DNA of 64,000 nt, from assembly GCF_030144855.1 (NCBI RefSeq), contig NC_082710.1, positions 98,642,001 through 98,706,000 on the forward strand, in the 5' to 3' direction. The translations under genes and the position numbers were made by a program. Under the pieces are notes generated by a model. The model was given only the letters and a program-made list of their open reading frames with translations. It did no database searches and was not told where the DNA came from. Below are positions 967 to 60,244 of this stretch, piece after piece. This DNA comes from Hypanus sabinus. Its lineage: Eukaryota. Numbering within the stretch: the first letter of the stretch is position 1; each line of letters begins with the position of its first letter.

Positions 967-1824
967 TGTTACGGTATGGCAACAATGAATATATAATTGA
1001 GACAGGTTTTTTATAACATATAAGACATTTATCAAACACTGCTAAAAAACCCCAGAAGTAAACAAACGACTAACTTAACTGGAAGTCGACTGCTATATGG
1101 CAGCTGGAACAGTTCTTAACGCAAGAAATGCAAAGTCAGTTCTTTAAAGTAGTATTGCAAAATGTCCAAAATGATTTACAGTCAGTTAGGAGAGACCTTC
1201 CTTGAAGTAATAGATTCTCTTTCATGATGTTACTGCTCATCCCAGCCAAAGTATGCCTTGCCCGAAAGATTTACAATAAGGAAAATAAAATAGCTTAAAA
1301 AAGGCACTGTCCTTTTCCTTTTGGCGAATAACTCACTGCCCCAGTCCTTTCTGCTCTTACACAGGGACTAATGTGGGTGCAGATTACTAATTCCATCCAA
1401 AGGAGGATCAAATAAGGTTGAACCTGTTTACCGCCGACACCACCAACTTGCCTCAATTCTTTGGCTTCCCGAACTTCGATAAATCTTCACTCTCCAACTG
1501 GACTTTAACTGGCAGTGATTTTCAGAACTGCCAGCACAACGATTCTTACAATAGAAATTAAAACTCCACTTTTAAAATGAAACTGCATCATTAAAATCAA
1601 ATACGCAGCAGAACGGAGTAACTGACAAATTAAACCATGAACTGACCTGCGTCACAGGGAGGGGTTCTCCTTTTATACCCTGTTGAAACAGGCCATCACA
1701 TGACCTCTCACTGTCGGGAAAATTACATCACTCCAACATCACAAGACCATTACATCATGCCCAGCAGAGCCTCAATTACATCATGGTCATGTGACAGTCA
1801 CAGGATACCCACGGATTCGTAACA
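967..1824 (-). mobile_element. Solo LTR (Gypsy-like), 858 bp
   Basis: Starts TGTTACG and ends CGTAACA (7-bp inverted termini, TG...CA). Flanks AAGC/AATC are a possible 4-bp TSD with one mismatch. TATAAAA on the minus strand at 1671-1677. No internal coding sequence. Confidence 0.75.
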
Positions 1825-1859
1825 AATCATCTGGCTGTCATCCTCCTACCTGCATACTG

Positions 1860-4075
1860 GCAAGGCACCAGGGGTAAAGATAATGCCGTGGGAGGCAGAG
1901 TGGCAGCTGCAGGATTGCTTCATGTTGGTGGACTGGACCATATTCAATGGCTCCTCAGAGGACCGGAATGAATACATCATGTTTGCAAATGAATTTATAA
2001 AGACACTCGTGGATGAGTGTGTATCCATGAAATCATTCAGAGTCTTCCCCAACTAGAAGCCCTGGAAAAACCAAGAGATCCACAATCTGCTAAGAGCCAG
2101 ATCAGTGGCATTGAGATATGATGACTAAAAGCACAAGATGTCCAGGTATGAATTCCAGAAAGCCATCTCACGTGCAAGGTGGCAATTCCAGATTAAGGTT
2201 GAATCACAGAAGGATGCTCAACAGCTGTGCCAGGGCTTGAATGCTATCATGTCCTACAACACCAAACCAAGTGACAGATGTGTCAAGAAGGGTTTGCTCC
2301 CAGATGAGCTCAATGCCTTTTACGCTTGCTATGAACAAGAGAACATGGAGGCACCATCACAAATTCCCACAGCCCCCTGTGATTTCAATCTCTGAGGCTG
2401 ACTTGAAGTGTCCTTCAGCAGGGTGAACTCAGGGAAAGAATCTGGTCCAGATGGTACACCTCATGGAGTACTGAAAAACTGTGCTAATCAGCTGGCTGAA
2501 GTGATCTCTAATATCTTTATCCTCTCAGAGCAGTCTGAGGCTCCCACCTGCTTTCAGCAAACCTCAGTCATCATTCCTCTACCGAAGAAGAACGTAGTTG
2601 CTTGCTTCAATGACTGTTGTCCAATAGCACTTACATCCACTCTGATGAAGTGCTTTGAGAGGATGGTCATAAAGTGTATAAATTCTGATTGAGGAATGAC
2701 TTGGATCCACTTCAATTTGCCTACCATCACAACAGGTCAACAACAAATGCCATTCCATTGGCTGTTCACTCAAACCTGCAATGTCTGGAGAGTGAAGATG
2801 GTACATCAACATGCTCTTCAGTGACTACAGTTCAGCATTCAATACTATCACTTCCTCTAAACTAACCAATAAGACCCAAGACCCAGGTGTCAATACCTCC
2901 TTGTGTGATTGGATCCTCAATTTCCTCACATGCAGACTCCAGTCAGTTCCGATTGGCAACATCTCCTCAATCATCATCAGCAGAGGTGCAGCACAAGGCT
3001 GTGTGCTTATCCCTCTGCTCTACACACGTTATACTTATGACAGTGAGGCTAAGTGCAGCTCCAATGTCATATTCAAGTTTGCTGATAACATCATTGTTGT
3101 TGGCCAAATCAAATATGGTGACGAATTGGCAAATAGGATGGAGATTGAAAATATGGTTGAAGTGTACCATAAACAACCTCTCACTCAATGTCAACAAGAC
3201 TAAGGAGCTGATTATTAACTACAGGAGGAAGAAACCGGAAGTCCATGAGCCAGTACTCATCGGACAATCAGAGGAGGAGAGAGTCAGCAGCTTTAAATTC
3301 CTTGGTGTTATCATATCAGAGGATCTGCTCTGGGACCAGCATGTAAGTTTCATTATAAAGAAGCATGGCAGTGCCTCTATTTTCTTAGAACTTTGTGCAG
3401 ATTCGGCCTGTCATCTAAAAATTTGACAAGCTTCTATAAATGCGTAGTGGTGAGTGTATCGATTGGCTGCATCACAGCCTGGCATGGAAACACGAATGGA
3501 AAAGCCTACAGGCATAAATGGATACAGCCCTACCAATCACAGGAAAAGCCTTCCCCACCATTGTGCAAATCTCCATGGAGTGCTGCATCCACCATCAGGA
3601 GTCATCCTCACACCATCAAGGCCATGCTCTCTTCTTGCTGCTGCCCTTGGCAAGAGGGTACATCAGCCTTAGGCCCCACATCACCACATTCAGGAACAGT
3701 AATTACACTTCAACTATCAGCCTTTTGAATGAGTGTGGATAACTTCACTCACCTCCAACTGAACTGATTCCGTAACCTATGGACTCATTTTTAAGTAGCA
3801 ACAACTTATGTTCTTAGTACTTTTAATGTATTTATTGATCTATCTATTTATTTATCTACCTATTTATTTATTATTACTTGTTTATTTGTATTTGCACAGT
3901 TTGCCTTCTTTTACACATCGCTCGTTTGTCAGTATTTGCTTGTTTGTAGTTTTTCATTGATTCTATTTTAATTCTTTATTCTGCTGTGAATGATTGCAAG
4001 AAAATGAAAATCTGGGCAGTGCATGGTGATGTAAGTGTACTTAGATAATAAATTTACTTTAAACTTTCAACTTTG
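1860..4075 (+). mobile_element. Rex1/Babar-type LINE, 5'-truncated and decayed (RT region plus 3' UTR)
   Basis: ORF fragments 2408-2692 (GPDG..LKNCANQL..IIPLPKK..PIALTSTLMKCFER), 2811-3203 (DYSSAFNTI..QGCVL..KFADN) and 2887-3426 (LNVNKTKELII..FKFLGV). Typical 3' UTR ending aataaatttactttaaacttt. Many frameshifts and stops. Confidence 0.9.
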
Positions 4076-4510: not shown

Positions 4511-5340
4511 ATGGGGACTTACCCTTGTAAGCAGATCAAGAGCCCACCTGCCTCCTCCATCACTACCATTCAATGCCCCAAACAGTCCTTCCAGGTGAGG
4601 AGAGACTTCGCCTGTGAGTTTGTTGGAGTCATCAAATGTATCGGGTGCTCCAGGTGTAGCCTCCTGTATATCGATGATAACCAATATGGATTAGGAGACT
4701 GCTTCATTGAGCACCTTCACTTTGTCTGCCACAAAAAGAGGGATTTCTTGGTGGTCACCCTTTCAATTTGACTCCTCACTGCCGTTCTGACATGTCAGTC
4801 CATGACCTCCTCTACTGCCACAAAGAGGCCACACTCAAGTTGGAGGAGCAATACCTTATATTCCATCTGGGTAGCTTCCAACCTGATGGAATGAACATTG
4901 ATTTCATGAACTTTAAGTAATTATCCCCTCCCCCATCCCCCTCCTTCACTATTTCCCATTCCTTTTTCTCTCTCATACCTTCTGTTCTTGACTACCCATC
5001 ACCTCCTTCTGGTGCTCCTCCCCTTTCCCTTTTTTCCAAGGACTTCTGTCCTTTCCAATTAGATTCCCTCTTGTCCAACTCTTTATCTCTTCCACCAATC
5101 AATTTCCCAGCTCTTCACCTGCTCCTGGTCTCACCTCTCGCCTTCCACCTTGTGCTTCTTCATCCCCTCCTCCCACCCTCTTATCCCAACTCTTCCCCCT
5201 TCCTTTACACTCCTGATGAAGGGTCCCAGCCCAAAACATCGACTGTTTATTCCCATACATAGATGCTGCCTAACCTGTTGAGCTGCTCCATCATATTGTG
5301 TGTATTGCTCTAGATTTCTGAATCTGCAGTGACTCTTGTG
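4511..5340 (+). mobile_element. Penelope-like element 3' fragment (GIY-YIG domain plus pseudo-LTR with degenerate hammerhead)
   Basis: ORF 4511-4771 GTYPCK..TTIQCPKQSFQVRRDFACE..GVIKCIGCSRCSLLYI. Pyrimidine-rich tract follows. CTGATGA-AGGGTCCCAGCCC-AAAACATC-GACT at 5213-5244. Confidence 0.88.
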
Positions 5341-5341
5341 C

Positions 5342-6260
5342 CTATGATCTATCTTACTCCTGTGTGGCTCCTCGCCACCATTTGAAATTCTGCCAGCAAA
5401 AGTTGTGATGTTGGCAAATTTATAGAAGGTGATAGCCACACAGACATGGGTGCAGAGCCAGCAGAGCAGGAGGCTAAGCATGAATCCTTGTGGTGTGCCA
5501 GTGTTGATTGTCATTGGGGAGGAGATGTTATTTCTGATCTGTGATCTCCCAGTGAGAAAGTCAAGGATCCAGTTGCAGACAGAGATACAGAGGCCCCGGT
5601 TTTGGAGCATGTTGATTAGAACTGAGGGCATGATTGTGTTGAATGCTGAGCTATAATCAATAAACAGTGAACTGATGCAGGTATTACTAATGCCCAGGTG
5701 ATCCAACACCAAGTGGAGAGGCAGTGAGATTGCCTCTGCTGTAGGCCTATAGTGAGAATAGGCAAATTGCAGCAGGTCCAAGTCCTTGCATAGGCAGGGG
5801 TTGATTCCAGTAATGACCAACCTCTCAAAACACTCCATCACAGCAGATGTGAGTGCTGCTGAGCGATAGTCATTGAGGCAGTTCACCTTACCCTTCTTGG
5901 GCACTAGTATAATTGTTGCATTCTTGAAGCAGGTGGGAACCCCTGACTGCAGTAGTGAGAGATGGAAGATGTCCTTAGCACTCCCACCAGTTGGTAGGCG
6001 CAGGTTTTCACAGGCCAACCAGGTATAACATCAGGGCCTGTTGCCTTATGTGAGTGCTGAAGTAATGGCCTGCGAACCCTGCCAAAGGTTGATGGGCATC
6101 CAATTACACCTCTAACTTCAATTAGAATTTTTTTCACCCTTAAAATAACCTTCTGTAGGTCATATCTGGACGTTTTGTATAGTTTTGGATCATTGGTCTT
6201 GAATGCCACATATCTAGCCCTCAGCAGACTATGAATCTTCTGGTTCGGGTATGATACTAA
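5342..6260 (-). mobile_element. Rex1/Babar-type LINE RT fragment
   Basis: ORF 5131-6018(-): VPTCFKNATIILVPKK..NDYRSAALTSAVMECFERLV..LQFAY..FIDYSSAFNTI..GTPQG..YKFAN. Confidence 0.9.
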
Positions 6261-10872: not shown

Positions 10873-12997
10873 TACTTTTTCCAATATTTTTATTAATTTA
10901 CATATAATAATAGAGTACAAGAAAAAATATAAATATCAATATACTAAATCGCATATAAATGCTCCTTACCCTATATTCATACAGATTAATTAATTCAGAA
11001 AATTGAAATAAAATAATTTTATTATATTAAAAAAATCTAACCCACTACCAAGACCAAAGGTGATTTGTAAAGAAAAAAAGGAAAAAAATTATTCATCATC
11101 ATCTGTGCTTTAACAGCAAATCGAAGCTTTTGAAAATAATTCAGAAAAGGTCCCCACAATGTTTGAAAGTATTGACCAGATTCAGAGATTGAACCTCAAA
11201 TCTTCTCTAAATTTAAACATGACATCTTATCACATAACCATTGTGCGTGAGTGGGGGGGGGGGGGGGTGCATCTTTCCATTTAAGCAAGAACGTCCTTCT
11301 GGCCATTAGAGAAATAAATGCCAAAATGTGCAAGTCAGATGGCTCCAAAGTAATATCCTTTCCTCCAACAATACCAAATAAAGCGGTCAAAGGATTAGGC
11401 TTAAAGTTTACTTTGAAAAGTATCGAGAAAGTTTGAAGTGCTTCTTTCCAATATTTTCCAAGACTCAGACATGACCAAAACATACGAATGAGTGAAGCTT
11501 CTCCATTATTACATTTATCAGAATGCGGAGATATATCTAAATAAAAACGAGACAACATCATATGCGCCCTATGGACCACTTTAAATTATAGGAGAGAGTG
11601 GCAGGCATGTAACGATGAAATAATAACTAATTTAAAAATTTGATTCCAAGTTTCCTCAGAAATTGAAATCTGTAAATCTTGTTCCCAAAGATTTTTAATT
11701 TTATCTAAAGGAACACTTCTCATTCCCAACAGCATATTATAAATATTACATATCGATCCATTATGAAAAGGTTTCAAATTAAAAAATACATCTAGTAGAT
11801 TCTTATTAGGATTTTTAGGAAATGTACTTATTTGAAACTATAAAAAATCTCTTATTTGTAGATATCAAACAAAATGAGTTTTTGGTAAACTATATTTAGT
11901 TAGCAATTGTTCAAACGAAAAGAGACTTCCCTCTACAAACAAGTCCTGAAAGCATTTAATACCTAGTCTTTAAAAGCCACATCAATCATAGAGGGTTTAA
12001 AAAAAATTAGAAAAAATGGGACTCAAAAGTGAAAATCTCAGTAAGCCAAAGTATTTTCAGAATTGTATCCAAATTCTCATAGTGTGTTTAACTACCAGAT
12101 TATCAGTTAACTTACTCAGAGACAGTGGAAGTGAGAATCCAAGAAGAGAAATTTAGAAATTTAGAAAATTTATTAACAGAGTTAGCTTCGGAAAAAACCC
12201 ACATCGGGCAATCCTCATGATTAATGTAATATAACCAAAATGTAAGATTTCTTATATTAACTGCCCAATAATAAAATCTAAAGTTTGGTAAGGCTAATCC
12301 TCCATTCTTTTTTATTTTTCTGAAGATGAATTTTATTTAATCTAGAATGCTTATCCTTCCATATATAAGAAGATATAATACAAAGTAGAATCAAGAAAAT
12401 CAAAAAACAAGATTCAGGAATAAAAACAGGCAATGCTTGAAAAAGACACATAAATTTAGATAATATATTCATTTTGATAGAGTTAATTCGGCCAATCAGT
12501 GATAACGAAAGAGGCAACCAATTTGATCGTATCCTTTTTACGTGATTCAATAGGGTAAGAAAGTTTTCTTGAAATAGACACGTACAGTTTTTAGTGATTG
12601 TTACACCTGAGTAGGTAACTTGGTTTCTTACAGTTTTAAAAGGAAGGTTAGAATTTGTTGGTATCAAATTATTCAAAAGGAAAAGTTCACTTTCATGTAA
12701 GTTTAATTTATAACCTGAGAACTGGCTAAAACAGGAGAGTAAAGAAAGCGCTTGGGTTAATGAAGTCTCAACATTAGAAATAAATAGCAGCAGATCATCA
12801 ACGTACAGAAAGACTTTGTGAATAGTGTCTCTCCCTAAAATACTGGTGATATCATTAGATTCTCGAAAGGCAATGGCTAAAGGTACTAAGGCCAGATCAA
12901 GAAGCAAAGGGCTCAGCGGACAGCCTTTCTAGTGCCATGTTGAAGCTTAAATGGTTTGGAATTATGAGAATTAGTGATAACCCTAGTGGAAGAAGCT
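10873..12997 (-). mobile_element. L1-clade LINE, 5'-truncated within the RT domain, decayed
   Basis: Minus-strand HGTRKG(C)PLSPLLLDLAL..LYVDDLLLFI..FSGYKLN..LSLIGRINSIKMNIL (12278-12907). Remnant of the C-terminal CCHC region DKCNNGEASLIRMFWSC (11196-11579). AATAAA (minus) at 10889-10894 followed by a short decayed A tail. Confidence 0.92.
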
Positions 12998-21485: not shown

Positions 21486-22160
21486 TTCTATGTAAGGAAG
21501 TGAATATAACCTTTTTTTATGGGCTTGTAAAATAAATCCTACGGAAGTAAATTACCTTGGAAACAGACTGTAACATTTGTAAACATTGTCTCAGAACTGC
21601 TTTTAAATGCTCCATTCTGTTCCAATGAATATTGATTCTACTCATGTGATGTTCAACTCATTGATATTTGCATACAAATCCAATAGCTGTTTTTTAGTTA
21701 ATTCACAAACCAGCAGGTGCAACATGCTTATTCTGGCTCTCAGTTTAATTCACAATTTGCCACATACTTCAACATATTCTCTTTTCGAATTTTAGAACTG
21801 TGAATCTTATTGTTTTTTTCCCCTTCCTTTCTCAGGATAAAATCCTTCTGAAAATGTTCACCATCTTTTAACCATTGCTGTTTGACATACCTCATCTAGT
21901 CTTCTGTTTATACAACAGTGATGAATTCTTGACCTTTGCATTGCTGTAATATTTCAAAGTACAAGCGTTCATGGGTTCCAGAGTTTTTCTGTAGCCCGGC
22001 ATATTTCACTTATGATAATATTATCGATGCTTTTAATATTAATCAGAAACTTGGAATCACAATGTGCAACTTAGCTGTGTCTGTGAGTGTATGTATGCTA
22101 TGCACAAAGATAAAAATCATTTGTTTATAACTTAACATTCCTGGATTTGTTTAATAAAAA

Positions 22161-22512
22161 GGTGTGTGCCACTGTAGTGCAACCCTATTACAACTCTGGG
22201 CGTGCTGGAGTCTGGAGTTCAGTTCCAGCCTAGAATATTGCTGAGTTTCAATTACCAATCCATTGTATTTGTCACCTAAACTTCAGCCTTTACTGATTTA
22301 TCAGCTGTAGGGAGCTTTTCCGTTCTCGCTGTGATTGTGTGGGTTTCCTTCCAGGGGTCTGGTTCCCTCCCGAAGACGGACCAGTTATTAGATCAATCAG
22401 TCTTTGTAAATTGTCCTGTGATTAGGCCAACATTTAGATAGATGGGTTGCAGGGTGACACGGCTTGTGGGCCAAAACAACCTGCTCCATGCTGTATCTCT
22501 AAATAAATGAAT
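22161..22512 (+). mobile_element. tRNA-derived V-SINE/HE1-like SINE containing a foreign 84-bp insert
   Basis: B-box-like GGAGTTCAGTTCC, V-domain-like gtgggtttcc..ggttccctccc..aagacg, CR1-type 3' tail gggccaaaacaacctgctccatgctgtatctctaaataaa. Homologous to 33677-33965. Confidence 0.75.
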
Positions 22513-22659
22513 AATCTGATCTAAAGCTTTCTTGTAAATTGAAAGCTTGGAACTTCTATTAACTTCGGGGTTCTCACGCGTAACTGTCATTCACTCTTTG
22601 GGGCACTTCTCTGTTTTTGTGGATGTTTTGCGAAGAAAGGGCAATCCAGGATGTATATT

Positions 22660-23693
22660 CGCAAACGTGAGGAAATCTGCAGATGCTGGAAATTCAAGCA
22701 ACACACCACCTCCAACGGGATCCCACTACTAGGCACATCTTTCCCTTCCCCTTCTTTCTGCTTACCACAGGAATCGTTCTTTATATAACTCCCTTGTCCA
22801 TTTGTTACCCCCCCCCCCCCCCAATCCCTTCCCACCGATCTCCCTCCTGGCACTTATCCTTGTAAGTAGAACAAGTGCTACACCTGCCCTTACACTTCCT
22901 CCCTCACCACCATTCAGGGCCCCAGACAGTCCTTCCAGGTGAGGCGACACTTCACCTGTGAGTCAGCTGGTGTGGTATACTGTATCCGGTGCTCCCGGTG
23001 TGGCCTTTTATATATTGGTGAGACCTGACGCAGACTGGAGACTATTTTGCTGAACACCTACGCTCAGTCCGCCAGAGAAAGCAGAATATCGCAGTGGCCA
23101 CACATTTTAATTCCATGTCCCATTCCCATTCAGATATGTCTATCCACGGCCTCCTCTTCTGTTAAGATGAAGCCATGCTCAGGTTGGAGGAACAACACCT
23201 TACATACTGCCTGGGTAGCCTCCAACCTGATGGCATGAACATTGACTTCTCGAACTTCCATTAATGCCCCTCTTCCCCTTCTTAGCCCATCCCTTATTTA
23301 TGTATTTATTTGTTTATTTATTTATTCATTCCCCTCCTCCTTTTTTTTTCTCTCTCTGCCTCTCTCACAATCACTCCTTGCCTGTTCTCCATCTCCCTCT
23401 AGTGCTCCCCTCCCCCTTTCTTTCTCCCTAGGTCTCTCATCCCATGATCCTTTCCCTTCTCCAGCTGTGTATCCCTTTTGCCAATCACCTTTCTAGCTCT
23501 TAGCTTCACCACTCCCCCTCCTGTCTTCTCCTATTATTTCAGATTTCTCTGTCCCCCTCCTTCTTTCAAATCTCTTACTATCTTTTCTTTCGGTTAGTCC
23601 TGACGAAGGGTCTCAGCCCGAAACGTCGACAGTGCTTCTTCCTATAGTTGCTGCCTGGCCTGCTGTGTTCCACCAGCATTTTGTGTGTGTTGT
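22660..23693 (+). mobile_element. Relatively young Penelope-like element, 5'-truncated, with inverted 5' pLTR tail, GIY-YIG pseudogene, pLTR and 13-bp TSD
   Basis: PGTYPCK*NKCYTCPYTSSLTTIQGPRQSFQVRRHFTCESAGVVYCIRCSRCGLLYIGET*R..AEHLRSV..LEEQHL..LGSLQPDGMNIDFSNF. TSD CAGGATGTATATT (22647-22659) / CAGAATGTATATT (23694-23706). Confidence 0.93.
23597..23630 (+). ncRNA. Minimal type-I hammerhead ribozyme motif in the PLE pseudo-LTR (core intact, activity untested)
   Basis: GUC-[CUGACGA]-A-GGGU(CUCA)GCCC-[GAAA]-CGUC^GAC. Both conserved core boxes present, 4-bp stem II, palindromic ACGU in place of stem III, GUC cleavage triplet, 3-bp stem I. Confidence 0.8.
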
Positions 23694-24967
23694 CAGAATG
23701 TATATTGTATACATTTCTCTGACATTAAATTGAACCTTTGAATCTTTAAACCTTTGATACTTATATTCTATTAATTGACTGAGAATAACCAAGTCGATGA
23801 AGTCAGACAGTACCTTTACTATTGTGTTGCTCTAGCATTTGTACAAATGTGAAGTCCAGGACAAGCTGGACATAAACAATCAAAAAGGCTGAGATCAAAT
23901 TAAGATAAAGGTGTGTGAGTCATTACTTAATGTCGAGAATGGTTGTACCTACTTCCATGCAGTATCTTCATGGTACCTTAACTGACAATTATTGGCCAGT
24001 GTTACAGTTTGAGGTAAATGTTAGCACTTTCTACACTATTGAACTTTTATGATACCTTGTAATACCAGAATGCATTCTGCTAACGAGAATAGTTTTATAT
24101 TATAGTTATTGACTTATTTTGGTTATCAAACAATACATCATGAAAATGTTCATAAAATGTACAAAATTACTTTAAGAACAGAGTAACTTGTTTTATAATA
24201 AATAATATTCCAGACTGTTTATAAGTTTCAAGGTATAATTACAAAAATTTAGATAGCTATTGCATTTTAAACAACTTCATGAATTTATAAGATTTAATTA
24301 ATGTCATAATGGGAGCTGGAACTAAGCATAATTTGTAAAACCTAAGTTTATTGGCTACATTTTAAATATAACTAAAAATCCTTATCCTAAAAAGGAAATT
24401 AACATTAAGCAATTTATTTTAAGTTATAAACTTATTAACCAGGAACAAAATAGAAAATAATTGCATTTTTAATGCAAATGTATAACTTACCAAAAAATTT
24501 CATTTCCAGCCTGGAATATTGCTGAGTTTCAAATTACCAAACCATTGTATTTTTCACCTAAACTTCAGCCTTTACTGATTTATCAGCTATTAGCTGCACT
24601 TTAAATGGCTATTGATACAGACAATTTCTGTCAAGACCTTCACTAACTGAATGGATAGTTTTTTTTTGATAAAAAGCAGGTTGGCTGTCTTCTAACTCCT
24701 GCTATCCAGCTTTAGTTTCAGTGATTATTACTTGTTCTAGCTGTTTAAGAGCAGCCAGGGAGAGCAAGAAAAAACATAATTAAGTCACCCTTGCTTACTT
24801 TGCTTTATTTTTGATTCTGAATAGCCCTGTTCCTAAATTCTTTTTGTACAGAAAATAGTCTGAGAAGTTTGGAGAAGTTTACAGTCTGAGTTTCCTAATT
24901 ATGTCAAAGTCATTAAAGAAGAATAAAACCAGCATTTGTTATTTTTGATTTCACGTGTTGATGATTT

Positions 24968-30867: not shown

Positions 30868-30955
30868 GAAAAACTGGACCAGTTCTTGGGTTTGCCTTGA
30901 GGGAGACAAAATTGACTTCTACAAAGATAGCAAACAACAAATTTTAGCCAATTCG
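30868..30955 (+). CDS. ARHGAP15: Rho GTPase-activating protein 15, internal coding exon (PH domain), 88 nt, phase 2 to phase 0
   Basis: Acceptor tcttatttattttccag, donor TCG|gtaagc. Translates (R)KNWTSSWVCLEGDKIDFYKDSKQQILANS, matching my recollection of human ARHGAP15 RKNWSTSWIVLSSRRIEFYKESKQQALSNM. Splices in frame to the next exon. Confidence 0.95.
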
Positions 30956-38189: not shown

Positions 38190-38600
38190 TCCCCCGTTTC
38201 CCTCCTATTTCACTTCTTGTTACGGTCTACTCTCCTCCCCTATCAGACTCCTTCTTCTCCAGCCCTTTATCTTTCCAATCCACCTGGCTTCACCTATCAT
38301 CTTCCAGCTGTCCTCCTTCCTCTCCTCCCAACTTTTTGTTCTGGTATCTTCCCCCTTTCTTTCCAGTCCTGAAGAAGGGCCTCGGCCCAAAATGTTGACA
38401 ATTTATTCATTTCCGGAGGTGCTGCCCAAGCTGCTGAGTTCCTCCAGCATTTTGTGTGTGTTGCTTAGGAGCTCAACAGGTTGGGCGGCATCAGTGGATT
38501 GGATTAGACACTCAATATTTTGGGCTAAGACCCTTCACTTATTCCCCTCTGTTGATGCTGCATGACCTGCCGAATACCCCCAGCATTCTGTGTGTGTTAA
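38190..38600 (+). mobile_element. PLE pseudo-LTR followed by an inverted and a second direct pLTR end
   Basis: CTGAAGA-AGGGCCTCGGCCC-AAAATGTT-GAC at 38369-38399. Direct end at 38420-38465, inverted piece at 38466-38540, direct end at 38545-38600. Confidence 0.8.
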
Positions 38601-53134: not shown

Positions 53135-53280
53135 TCTTTGCTGAAGGATTTCAGCCTGAAACATCAACTGTACTCTTTCTTATAGATGCTGCCTGGTCTG
53201 CTGAGTCCCTCCAGCATTTTGTGTGTGTTGTTTGGATTTCCAGAAACACACACACACTGCAGATTTTCTCTTGTTTCCAG
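53135..53280 (+). mobile_element. Solitary PLE pseudo-LTR end including the 3' tail
   Basis: tgaaggatttcagcctgaaacatcaactg..gatgctgcctggtctgctgagtccctccagcattttgtgtgtgttgtttggatttccag. Confidence 0.8.
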
Positions 53281-59951: not shown

Positions 59952-60244
59952 CTTTAAAACAAAATCAGCCAGCATATGTGGAAATTCAGTATATGCAAGA
60001 TAAACAAAATTTTAAAAATATATACACACAAAATACTGGAGGAACTCAGCAGGCTAAGCAGCATTTAGAAAAAGAAACCTATCCTGCAGAAGGGTTTCAT
60101 CCTGAAATGTCAAATGTACTCTTTTTCTAGATGCTGCCTGGCCTGCTGAGTTCTTCCAGCATTTTGTGTGCATATTTTCTTTAATTGTGCAAATCTTGCA
60201 TATACATACTGAATTTCCACATATGCTGGCTGATATTTTTAAAG
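59952..60244. repeat. 293-bp fold-back: inverted arms of about 124 bp around a degenerate hammerhead loop; inner 50 bp of each arm is PLE pLTR
   Basis: Arms 59952-60075 and 60120-60244. They include the exact 29-bp inverted match ATCAGCCAGCATATGTGGAAATTCAGTAT. Confidence 0.92.

What the first reader, a model, noticed from the sequence alone, without database searches (positions are those of the whole stretch)
23597..23630. Core-intact minimal hammerhead ribozyme in sense orientation inside an ARHGAP15 intron
Seen: stem I GUC/GAC, core CUGACGA (23600-23606), an extra A before stem II, stem II GGGU/GCCC with CUCA loop, GAAA (23620-23623), then CGUC with predicted cleavage after C23627. Stem III collapses to the palindrome ACGU, so it can form only between two copies. 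Established: minimal PLE hammerheads lacking stem III are proposed to act as dimers, and an extra A between A9 and G10.1 is a tolerated natural variant known from a viroid hammerhead. Inference: this copy could cut the nascent pre-mRNA only when paired with a second copy in cis or trans, a conditional intronic cleavage switch. Caveat: stem I is only 3 bp here (5 bp CAGTC/GACTG in other copies), so activity may be low or nil.
Basis: partly seen in the sequence, partly recalled or inferred. Interest (0 to 1): 0.75.

Follow-up and report, generated by a model that had tools for sequence, protein, structure and literature searches.

The report
Dead Penelope retrotransposon's minimal hammerhead motif
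The hammerhead ribozyme motif is really there and its catalytic core is intact, but it is the standard tail motif of a broken 1-kb Penelope-like jumping gene that landed in an intron; alone it almost certainly does not cut the gene's RNA, so it is ordinary.

Summary
The motif at 23597-23630 (+) reads exactly as described, and shuffled sequence never produces it. It is not a stand-alone intronic device. It lies 333 nt 3' of the decayed GIY-YIG endonuclease ORF of a 5'-truncated Penelope-like element (PLE). That insertion spans 22660-23697 and is flanked by a 9-bp target-site duplication, ATGTATATT, which occurs only at those two places in the window.

Every unusual feature matches the published "min-HHR" of metazoan PLE terminal repeats (Cervera & de la Peña 2014). 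These features are the extra A after A9, G10.1-C11.1, no stem III with a palindromic ACGU, and a short stem I. The same motif occurs in at least 120 metagenome contigs, in many of them just 3' of an RT/GIY-YIG ORF, with covarying 2-4 bp stems I.

The window holds nine family copies. Only this one keeps an intact core; the other eight carry core substitutions, many at CpG sites. No competent partner lies within -23.6 kb or +40.4 kb. Nearest-neighbour folding favours an inactive hairpin over the double hammerhead by about 9.5 kcal/mol.

Sense orientation in a + strand ARHGAP9/12/15/27-type gene is supported. The "conditional cleavage switch" is not supported. The scan has noted this family repeatedly elsewhere in this genome.

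The parts
22651..22659 (.). Left copy of the 9-bp target-site duplication ATGTATATT
   Evidence: this 9-mer occurs only twice in the 64-kb window, at 22651 and 23698, directly flanking the insertion.
22660..23697 (+). 5'-truncated, decayed Penelope-like element insertion (1,038 bp)
   Evidence: Bounded by the target-site duplication. It contains the endonuclease remnant, a CT-rich untranslated stretch, the hammerhead and the terminal arm. Two other window copies share this layout (4514-5330 + and 1-703 -).
22670..22706 (-). Inverted fragment of the element's optional 3' tail, at the 5' junction of the insertion
   Evidence: its reverse complement matches the extended tail seen after GTGTGTGTTG in the copy at 53143. 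This copy lacks that extension at its own 3' end.
22704..23264 (+). Remnant of the PLE ORF C-terminus (GIY-YIG endonuclease domain)
   Evidence: tblastn to full-length RT+GIY-YIG proteins: P0009 59% identity, E 1.6e-24. A 52-aa piece is 96% identical to P0001. The ORF is broken by in-frame stops at 22867, 23026 and 23163 and by several frame changes; the terminal stop is at 23262. The Pfam GIY-YIG match for the fragment alone is weak (E 0.18).
23265..23596 (+). CT-rich untranslated stretch between the ORF stop and the hammerhead
   Evidence: the other two ORF-linked window copies have a comparable CT-rich spacer, with about 260-325 nt between the end of endonuclease homology and the hammerhead in the three copies. 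No CpG is left in 23282-23583.
23597..23630 (+). Minimal type-I hammerhead motif: stem I 23597-99/23628-30; core C3-A9 23600-06; extra A 23607; stem II 23608-11/23616-19 with loop 23612-15; G12-A14 23620-22; palindromic ACGU 23623-26; C17 23627
   Evidence: It is the only one of nine window copies with every core nucleotide intact, and it keeps all four CpGs.
23631..23697 (+). 3' arm of the Penelope terminal repeat, ending in the GT-rich stretch
   Evidence: The conserved arm (GCTGCCTGGCCTGCTG...CAGCATTTTGTGTG) recurs after the hammerhead in the other copies.
23698..23706 (.). Right copy of the target-site duplication ATGTATATT
30868..30955 (+). Host-gene exon (PH-domain piece, ...RKNWTSSWVCLEGDKIDFYKDSKQQILANS) with a polypyrimidine-AG acceptor and a GTAAGC donor
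   Evidence: phmmer against PDB hits the ARHGAP27 PH domain (3pp2, E 8e-4) and the ARHGAP9 PH domain (E 0.046). This shows the gene runs on the + strand and places the hammerhead 7.2 kb upstream of this exon.
5208..5250 (+). Nearest upstream same-strand family copy, core dead (G12 to A; ACAT in place of ACGT)
   Evidence: it lies 18.4 kb away.
38364..38406 (+). Nearest downstream same-strand family copy, core dead (G12 to A; ATGTT)
   Evidence: it lies 14.7 kb away. It forms a tail-to-tail fold-back with the copy at 38518(-).

Best explanation
The motif is the standard minimal hammerhead (min-HHR) carried in the terminal repeat of Penelope-like retrotransposons. Here it sits in a dead, 5'-truncated, 1,038-bp copy that inserted by target-primed reverse transcription into an AT-rich site of a host intron, duplicating 9 bp. 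In active, tandemly arranged elements, two such motifs on one transcript are thought to pair through the palindromic ACGU and through swapped stems I. This forms a double hammerhead in which each core cuts the other unit's C17. Activity is low and probably assisted by the element's protein, and the cut trims the element's RNA. At this locus there is only one unit. Its preferred fold is an inactive hairpin, with GACG of the core paired to CGUC at the cleavage site. The nearest same-strand copies have lost G12. The motif is therefore a passive passenger in the pre-mRNA, and its intact core reflects chance survival in one of the less decayed copies, not host function. Shown here: sequence, element context, target-site duplication, family membership, absence of cis partners, and fold energies. 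Inferred: the dimer mechanism, the lack of cleavage in vivo, and neutrality.
For: - **Motif exact and non-random:**
- **Element context:** an endonuclease remnant lies upstream on the same strand, with tblastn E 1.6e-24 to RT+GIY-YIG proteins and 96% identity to P0001 over 52 aa. The 9-bp target-site duplication is unique to the two flanks.
- **Shared layout:** two other window copies have the same ORF-spacer-hammerhead-arm arrangement.
- **Relatives elsewhere:** the same 28-nt motif pattern is present in at least 120 metagenome contigs. In many of them it lies roughly 80-150 nt 3' of a PLE ORF on the same strand, for example L004, L097, L111, L121, L033 and L105.
- **Stem I covaries across these relatives:** pair 1 is formed in 94% and pair 2 in 92% (41 G-C against 36 C-G), pair 3 in 69% and pair 4 in 51%.
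- **All defining min-HHR features of PMC4209133 are met.**
- **Only one of nine window copies has an intact core.** G12 is lost in five of the other eight and the rest have other core substitutions, many at CpG sites. CpG observed/expected is 0.34 for this element, 0-0.25 for the other copies measured and 0.22 for the window.
- **Folding:** the monomer MFE is -12.0 kcal/mol as an inactive hairpin against -7.8 for the hammerhead-like fold. The double hammerhead is -14.5 against -24.0 for two monomers and -28.6 for the cofold MFE.
- **Literature:** single min-HHRs were inactive and dimers weak in vitro (PMC4209133). The Anolis PLE hammerhead cut only with the element's protein, was dispensable for insertion in vitro, and left no RNA-seq ends (PMC11167929). 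In Xenopus, 42-44% of related HHR-bearing repeats overlap introns (bioRxiv 10.64898/2026.07.22.740005), so intronic copies are commonplace.
Against:
- The ORF remnant is heavily broken, with three stops and several frame changes, yet the 34-nt motif has kept all four CpGs. This is somewhat lucky under neutrality: my rough estimate is a few percent per copy, which is acceptable given the very large copy number.
- Nearest-neighbour energies ignore tertiary contacts, Mg2+ and protein chaperones.
- Transcripts of other, intact family copies could in principle act as trans partners.
Confidence: 0.9

Rival explanations
1. One reading: the intact sense-strand motif is a conditional switch. It would cut the nascent host pre-mRNA when a second copy pairs with it in cis or in trans.
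For: The core is intact and the motif is in sense orientation to the + strand exon at 30868-30955. The dimer model is published (PMC4209133). The 5' stem-I strand TAGTC could form 5 pairs (one a wobble) with the consensus GACTG of another copy (inference).
Against: There is no core-intact partner on either strand in the window. The nearest same-strand copies are 18.4 and 14.7 kb away and lack G12. In the domain-swapped dimer, the cut at 23627 needs the partner's core (topology). The active dimer is predicted to be about 9.5 kcal/mol less stable than two inactive hairpins. The added ACGU helix is worth only about -1.7 to -3.1 kcal/mol, which is too weak for an untethered trans encounter. Published activity is nil for monomers and low for dimers (PMC4209133). 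The motif arrived with a transposon, and the other copies in the window have decayed cores.
Confidence: 0.03
2. At family level, the motif's main job is not self-cleavage. It would act as a structured recognition or folding element of the element's 3' region, for example a protein-binding hairpin near the reverse-transcription start. Its ribozyme-like core would be retained for that reason or as a vestige.
For: The monomer MFE is a continuous hairpin that uses core nucleotides, and GAYG:CGUC pairing is possible for both C7 and U7 variants. Catalytic mutants did not affect insertion in vitro for the Anolis element, and no cleaved ends were found in RNA-seq (PMC11167929).
Against: Conservation falls exactly on the catalytic residues (C3-A9, G12-A14, C17), with covariation only in the stems. 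Protist, plant and fungal PLEs carry fully active canonical hammerheads (PMC4209133). The C3/G8 compensatory mutant restores cleavage in Anolis (PMC11167929).
Confidence: 0.12
3. The motif is a chance resemblance to a hammerhead in low-complexity intronic DNA.
For: Rfam gives no hammerhead hit.
Against: Zero matches were expected in shuffles. Nine family copies lie in the window. The identical motif lies next to PLE ORFs in many unrelated contigs. Rfam also misses those bona fide cases.
Confidence: 0.005

Closest known systems
min-HHR of metazoan Penelope-like elements (Cervera & de la Peña 2014, PMC4209133; Lünse, Weinberg & Breaker 2017, cited in PMC6765202)
   Same: Type-I topology, full catalytic core, an unpaired nucleotide between A9 and G10.1, a G10.1-C11.1 pair, no stem III with a palindromic 15.x/16.x, a short stem I, and a location in the terminal repeat just 3' of the RT/GIY-YIG ORF. 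It is dispersed mostly as single motifs from truncated elements.
   Different: Nothing structural differs. Stem II is 4 bp, whereas the Schistosoma families have 7-8 bp. The paper text I read does not name rays or sharks, although it lists diverse fishes, coelacanth, Xenopus and reptiles.
Poseidon element of Anolis carolinensis (PAc) and its hammerhead (Frangieh et al. 2024, PMC11167929)
   Same: A vertebrate PLE with a hammerhead in the terminal repeat, insertion at AT-rich targets, 3' ends defined by an internal reverse-transcription start with an optional 30-40 bp tail, and a ribozyme that needs help (protein) to cut.
   Different: In PAc the ORF start overlaps the hammerhead in the tandem arrangement. 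Here only the 3' repeat of a truncated copy is present, and no intact protein is encoded locally.
Double hammerheads of newt satellite 2 and ASBVd (Forster et al. 1988, as cited in PMC4209133 and PMC6466107)
   Same: An unstable or absent stem III, so that activity requires two units merging their stems III.
   Different: Those occur as tandem or multimeric transcripts that guarantee a partner. This copy is solitary.
Conserved intronic self-cleaving ribozymes of amniotes (intronic hammerheads reported by De la Peña & García-Robles 2010, cited in PMC4209133; CPEB3 HDV-like ribozyme, bioRxiv 10.1101/2022.09.22.508989)
   Same: A ribozyme motif in sense orientation inside an intron of a protein-coding gene.
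   Different: From my own knowledge, not tested here: those fold as stable monomers and are conserved at orthologous positions. This motif lacks stem III, belongs to a dead transposon copy, and its orthologous conservation is unknown.
Animal non-LTR retrozymes (Cervera & de la Peña 2020, PMC7229834; Li, Clavereau & Pollet 2026 preprint)
   Same: Type-I hammerheads with minimal stem III, derived from PLE terminal repeats; monomeric copies are dispersed, often in introns.
   Different: Retrozymes are tandem repeats that yield circular RNAs. This locus has no tandem unit.

Membership tests
PLE min-HHR (Cervera & de la Peña 2014) | Intact catalytic core: C3 U4 G5 A6 N7 G8 A9, G12 A13 A14, A15.1/U16.1, and H17 (not G) | tested here: met
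   CTGACGA 23600-06, GAA 23620-22, A23623/T23626, C23627.
PLE min-HHR (Cervera & de la Peña 2014) | [quoted passage not shown] | tested here: met
   A23607. It is present in all nine window copies and was fixed in the pattern that retrieved the 128 metagenome motif instances.
PLE min-HHR (Cervera & de la Peña 2014) | G10.1-C11.1 closing pair of stem II | tested here: met
   G23608-C23619; stem II pair probabilities are 0.86-0.95.
PLE min-HHR (Cervera & de la Peña 2014) | No stem III hairpin; positions 15.x/16.x palindromic, so that stem III forms only between two units | tested here: met
   ACGU 23623-26. A 2-nt loop is sterically impossible. An intermolecular ACGU duplex is possible but weak.
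PLE min-HHR (Cervera & de la Peña 2014) | Short type-I stem I that covaries across families | tested here: met
   3 bp here. Among 90 distinct relatives, pairs 1-2 are formed in 92-94% with G-C/C-G and A-U/U-A exchanges, pair 3 in 69% and pair 4 in 51%.
PLE min-HHR (Cervera & de la Peña 2014) | Location in the terminal repeat next to an RT + GIY-YIG ORF, on the same strand | tested here: met
   The endonuclease remnant at 22704-23264 (+) ends 333 nt upstream. Homologues P0009, P0019, P0043 and P0131 carry RVT_1 + GIY-YIG. The same arrangement is seen in metagenome contigs.
PLE min-HHR (Cervera & de la Peña 2014) | Self-cleavage as a dimer | not testable with these tools
Canonical type-I hammerhead as modelled in Rfam | Score at or above the family gathering threshold | tested here: not met
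   No hit at gathering score or at E<=10. Control: four contigs with the same motif next to PLE ORFs also gave no hammerhead hit at E<=1, so the model does not cover this subclass.
Non-LTR retrozyme | Head-to-tail tandem repeats of the hammerhead-bearing unit | tested here: not met
   Self-comparison of 22000-24200 against the window finds no adjacent second unit. The 28-mer occurs once.
Host-domesticated intronic ribozyme | Stable monomeric active fold | tested here: not met
   There is no stem III. The MFE is an inactive hairpin at -12.0 kcal/mol against -7.8 for the hammerhead-like fold.
Host-domesticated intronic ribozyme | Conservation at the orthologous position in related species | not testable with these tools
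   No tool gave access to other ray genomes for non-coding DNA. P0001 and P0002 loci came without DNA.

The most novel reading that the evidence does not exclude
When active family members are expressed, their protein or RNA could assist this solitary, core-intact, sense-strand motif to form a domain-swapped double hammerhead in trans. That would occasionally sever the nascent host pre-mRNA and couple transposon activity to the output of an ARHGAP15-like gene.
Probability: 0.02. Interest if true: 0.6.

Novelty: already known. Interest (0 to 1): 0.1.

Why it matters
As it stands it matters little. It is one more copy of a published and very abundant motif class, in a dead transposon fragment, and intronic copies of such elements are common. 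It would matter only if solitary minimal hammerheads in sense orientation could be shown to cut host pre-mRNAs, because thousands of genes in fish, amphibians and reptiles would then carry latent cleavage sites. The useful by-products are three. The locus has cleanly defined insertion boundaries that allow unique read mapping. The dimer model predicts that each core cuts the partner's site. And a genome-wide orientation and intactness test could settle whether such copies are ever active.

Tried and rejected
- **Rfam:** searches of the window and of the local 400 nt gave no hammerhead hit. I judged this uninformative after the control.
- Ends at 23627/23628, intron coverage and strand could not be examined.
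- **Pfam on broken endonuclease pieces:** only a weak GIY-YIG hit (E 0.18), and nothing for other window copies. I replaced this with an exhaustive HMMER search and tblastn.
- **Fetching closest genomic relatives:** P0001 and P0002 loci came without DNA because the file was too large. P0006 was not on record. L001 had only 290 nt of 3' flank and no motif. L003 had no motif. L002 (another cartilaginous-fish assembly) held only a diverged copy of the cassette.
- **Other exons of the host gene:** motif regexes for RhoGAP exons and for the preceding PH-domain exon found nothing. The name ARHGAP15 is therefore not verified beyond the ARHGAP9/12/15/27 group.
- **Alternative monomeric stem III:** I looked for one using downstream sequence and rejected it, because no downstream U-H-GAC context fits (read).
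- **Chance match:** considered and rejected.

Full report
**Observation.**
- In hammerhead numbering, C3-A9 is 23600-06 and the extra A is 23607.
- Stem II is 23608-11 paired with 23616-19.
- G12-A14 is 23620-22, A15.1-C15.2-G16.2-U16.1 is 23623-26, and C17 is 23627.
- The relaxed pattern CTGANGA-N8-20-GAAACGTC occurs once, against 0.00 expected in shuffles.
- Rfam finds nothing, either at gathering score or at E<=10 locally.
- That negative is uninformative. Four contigs in which the same motif sits next to a Penelope ORF also gave no hammerhead match.

**What surrounds it.** Upstream on the same strand, 22704-23264 translates into the C-terminal GIY-YIG endonuclease part of a Penelope-like element (PLE) protein.
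- A 52-residue stop-free piece is 96% identical to P0001 and 88% identical to P0002. It is 46-62% identical to full-length proteins of 816-927 aa.
- Four of those five full-length proteins carry RVT_1 followed by a C-terminal GIY-YIG domain. From my own knowledge, that domain order is characteristic of PLEs.
- tblastn of those proteins against the window gives E 1.6e-24 at 22846-23037.
- The remnant is dead. It has in-frame stops at 22867, 23026 and 23163, several frame changes, and a terminal stop at 23262.
- A CT-rich spacer follows, then the hammerhead 333 nt after the stop. Next comes a conserved arm ending in a GT-rich stretch at about 23692.
- The 9-mer ATGTATATT occurs only twice in the whole window, at 22651 and 23698, directly flanking this unit.
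- The hammerhead therefore arrived as part of a 1,038-bp 5'-truncated PLE insertion (22660-23697) with a 9-bp target-site duplication in an AT-rich target. Frangieh et al. report AT-rich target cleavage for a vertebrate PLE (PMC11167929).
- At the 5' junction, 22670-22706 is an inverted copy of the optional tail that this copy lacks at its 3' end.

**Family.** A 19-mer from the motif, with up to 3 mismatches, finds nine copies in the window.
- Three of them (this one, 4514-5330 + and 1-703 -) show the same ORF-spacer-hammerhead-arm layout.
- All nine have the extra A.
- Only the copy at 23597 keeps the whole core. The others have lost G12 (CCCGAAA to CCCAAAA) or other core or stem III positions, many at CpG sites.
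- CpG observed/expected is 0.34 for this element, 0-0.25 for the other copies measured and 0.22 for the window. This copy is therefore among the least CpG-decayed.
- In many of those contigs the motif lies roughly 80-150 nt 3' of a PLE ORF on the same strand. Examples are L004, L097, L111, L121, L033, L105 and L118.
- Among 90 distinct motif instances, stem I pair 1 is formed in 94% and pair 2 in 92% (41 G-C against 36 C-G). Pair 3 is formed in 69% and pair 4 in 51%, with no pairing beyond that.
- Stem I is therefore real, covaries, and is typically 2-4 bp. The 3 bp seen here is normal for the class.

**Comparison with the literature.** Cervera & de la Peña (PMC4209133) defined this class as min-HHRs in the terminal repeats of metazoan PLEs.
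- Its features are no stem III, palindromic 15.2-16.2, a nucleotide between 9 and 10.1, G10.1-C11.1 and a short helix I.
- Thousands of mostly solitary copies occur per genome, in fishes, coelacanth, Xenopus and reptiles.
- They found no detectable cleavage for a single motif and low activity for dimers and trimers.
- For the Anolis Poseidon element, cleavage occurred only with the element's protein and catalytic mutants did not impair insertion in vitro. No RNA-seq reads began or ended at the site (PMC11167929).
- A 2026 preprint derives animal retrozymes from PLE terminal repeats. It reports 42-44% of such sequences overlapping introns in Xenopus and includes a chondrichthyan (10.64898/2026.07.22.740005).
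- Every defining sequence feature is met here. Only catalysis could not be tested.

**Can this copy cut?**
- A monomer cannot form stem III.
- ViennaRNA predicts an MFE of -12.0 kcal/mol for 23590-23640. In that fold GACG of the core pairs with CGUC at the cleavage site. The hammerhead-like arrangement scores -7.8.
- Writing out the double hammerhead shows it is necessarily domain-swapped. The junction that contains core A is closed by U16.1-C17 and the 3' stem-I strand of unit B (structure; inference from topology).
- A cut at 23627 would therefore need a partner with an intact core.
- The double hammerhead scores -14.5 kcal/mol, against -24.0 for two monomers and -28.6 for the cofold MFE.
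- The extra ACGU helix is worth only -1.7 to -3.1 kcal/mol.
- The nearest same-strand copies are 18.4 kb upstream and 14.7 kb downstream, and both lack G12.
- These energies ignore tertiary contacts and protein help, so they argue against spontaneous activity but do not exclude it.

**Gene context.**
- A stop-free segment on the + strand contains RKNWTSSWVCLEGDKIDFYKDSKQQILANS. It is bounded by a polypyrimidine-AG acceptor at 30868 and a GTAAGC donor after 30955.
- It matches the PH domains of ARHGAP27 (E 8e-4) and ARHGAP9.
- From my memory of the human protein it is closest to ARHGAP15, but that was not tool-tested.
- The exon is internal to the PH domain, so transcription starts further upstream. 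No preceding exon was found in the window.

**Limits.**
- The closest genomic relatives could not be fetched as DNA.
- Earlier notes of this scan describe the same family on many other pieces of this genome. One follow-up called a 102-bp stub one of about 4,100 identical copies. I did not verify that number.

**Verdict.** This is a correctly read motif of an already described kind, in a dead transposon copy. The proposed host function is unsupported and unlikely.

Noticed in passing
window 22218-22306 and 24499-24588: A 90-bp direct repeat (94% identical) brackets a 2.2-kb segment that contains the PLE insertion and its AT-rich host flanks. It is too long and too far out to be the PLE's target-site duplication. 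It may be two copies of another repeat or a local duplication.
   Followed up: partly
window 22670-22706 (-): The 5' junction of the truncated PLE carries an inverted copy of the optional 3' tail. That tail segment is missing from the element's own 3' end, which looks like a footprint of the unusual PLE insertion mechanism.
   Followed up: partly
window 38364-38546 and 60024-60170: Fold-back arrangements: two hammerhead cassettes lie tail-to-tail (38374+ and 38518-), and one cassette is flanked by inverted copies of the terminal arm (about 60024-60170). In the second case the arms would give the decayed hammerhead a very long stem I.
   Followed up: partly
window 23602-23605 with 23624-23627: Core nucleotides GACG can pair with CGUC at the cleavage site, giving an inactive rod-like hairpin. 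U7 variants of the family keep this option through a G-U wobble, so it may be a built-in off state.
   Followed up: partly
window 30868-30955 (+): An 88-nt PH-domain exon of an ARHGAP9/12/15/27-type gene with canonical splice signals. It is the only host exon I could recognise in the window.
   Followed up: partly
window 2811-3728 (+), 5131-6018 (-), 12278-12907 (-): ORFs whose motifs look like reverse transcriptase (I did not test them), probably remnants of other retroelements. The region is a dense mosaic of retrotransposon debris.
   Followed up: no
window 22300-22540: A stretch with high CpG (observed/expected 0.48 over 22307-22823), just upstream of the PLE, that does not match the PLE copies. 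It may be a different repeat and was not identified.
   Followed up: no
L097:2750-2922: A long, near-perfect inverted repeat in a metagenome contig downstream of a PLE. It scores below threshold against several miRNA-precursor models on both strands and is probably a transposon hairpin.
   Followed up: no
L004:1060-1087 (-) and 3582-3609 (+): Two identical-type min-HHRs in opposite orientation flank a PLE ORF (1803-3437) in a metagenome contig. This is an example of the inverted terminal arrangement in a probably younger element.
   Followed up: partly
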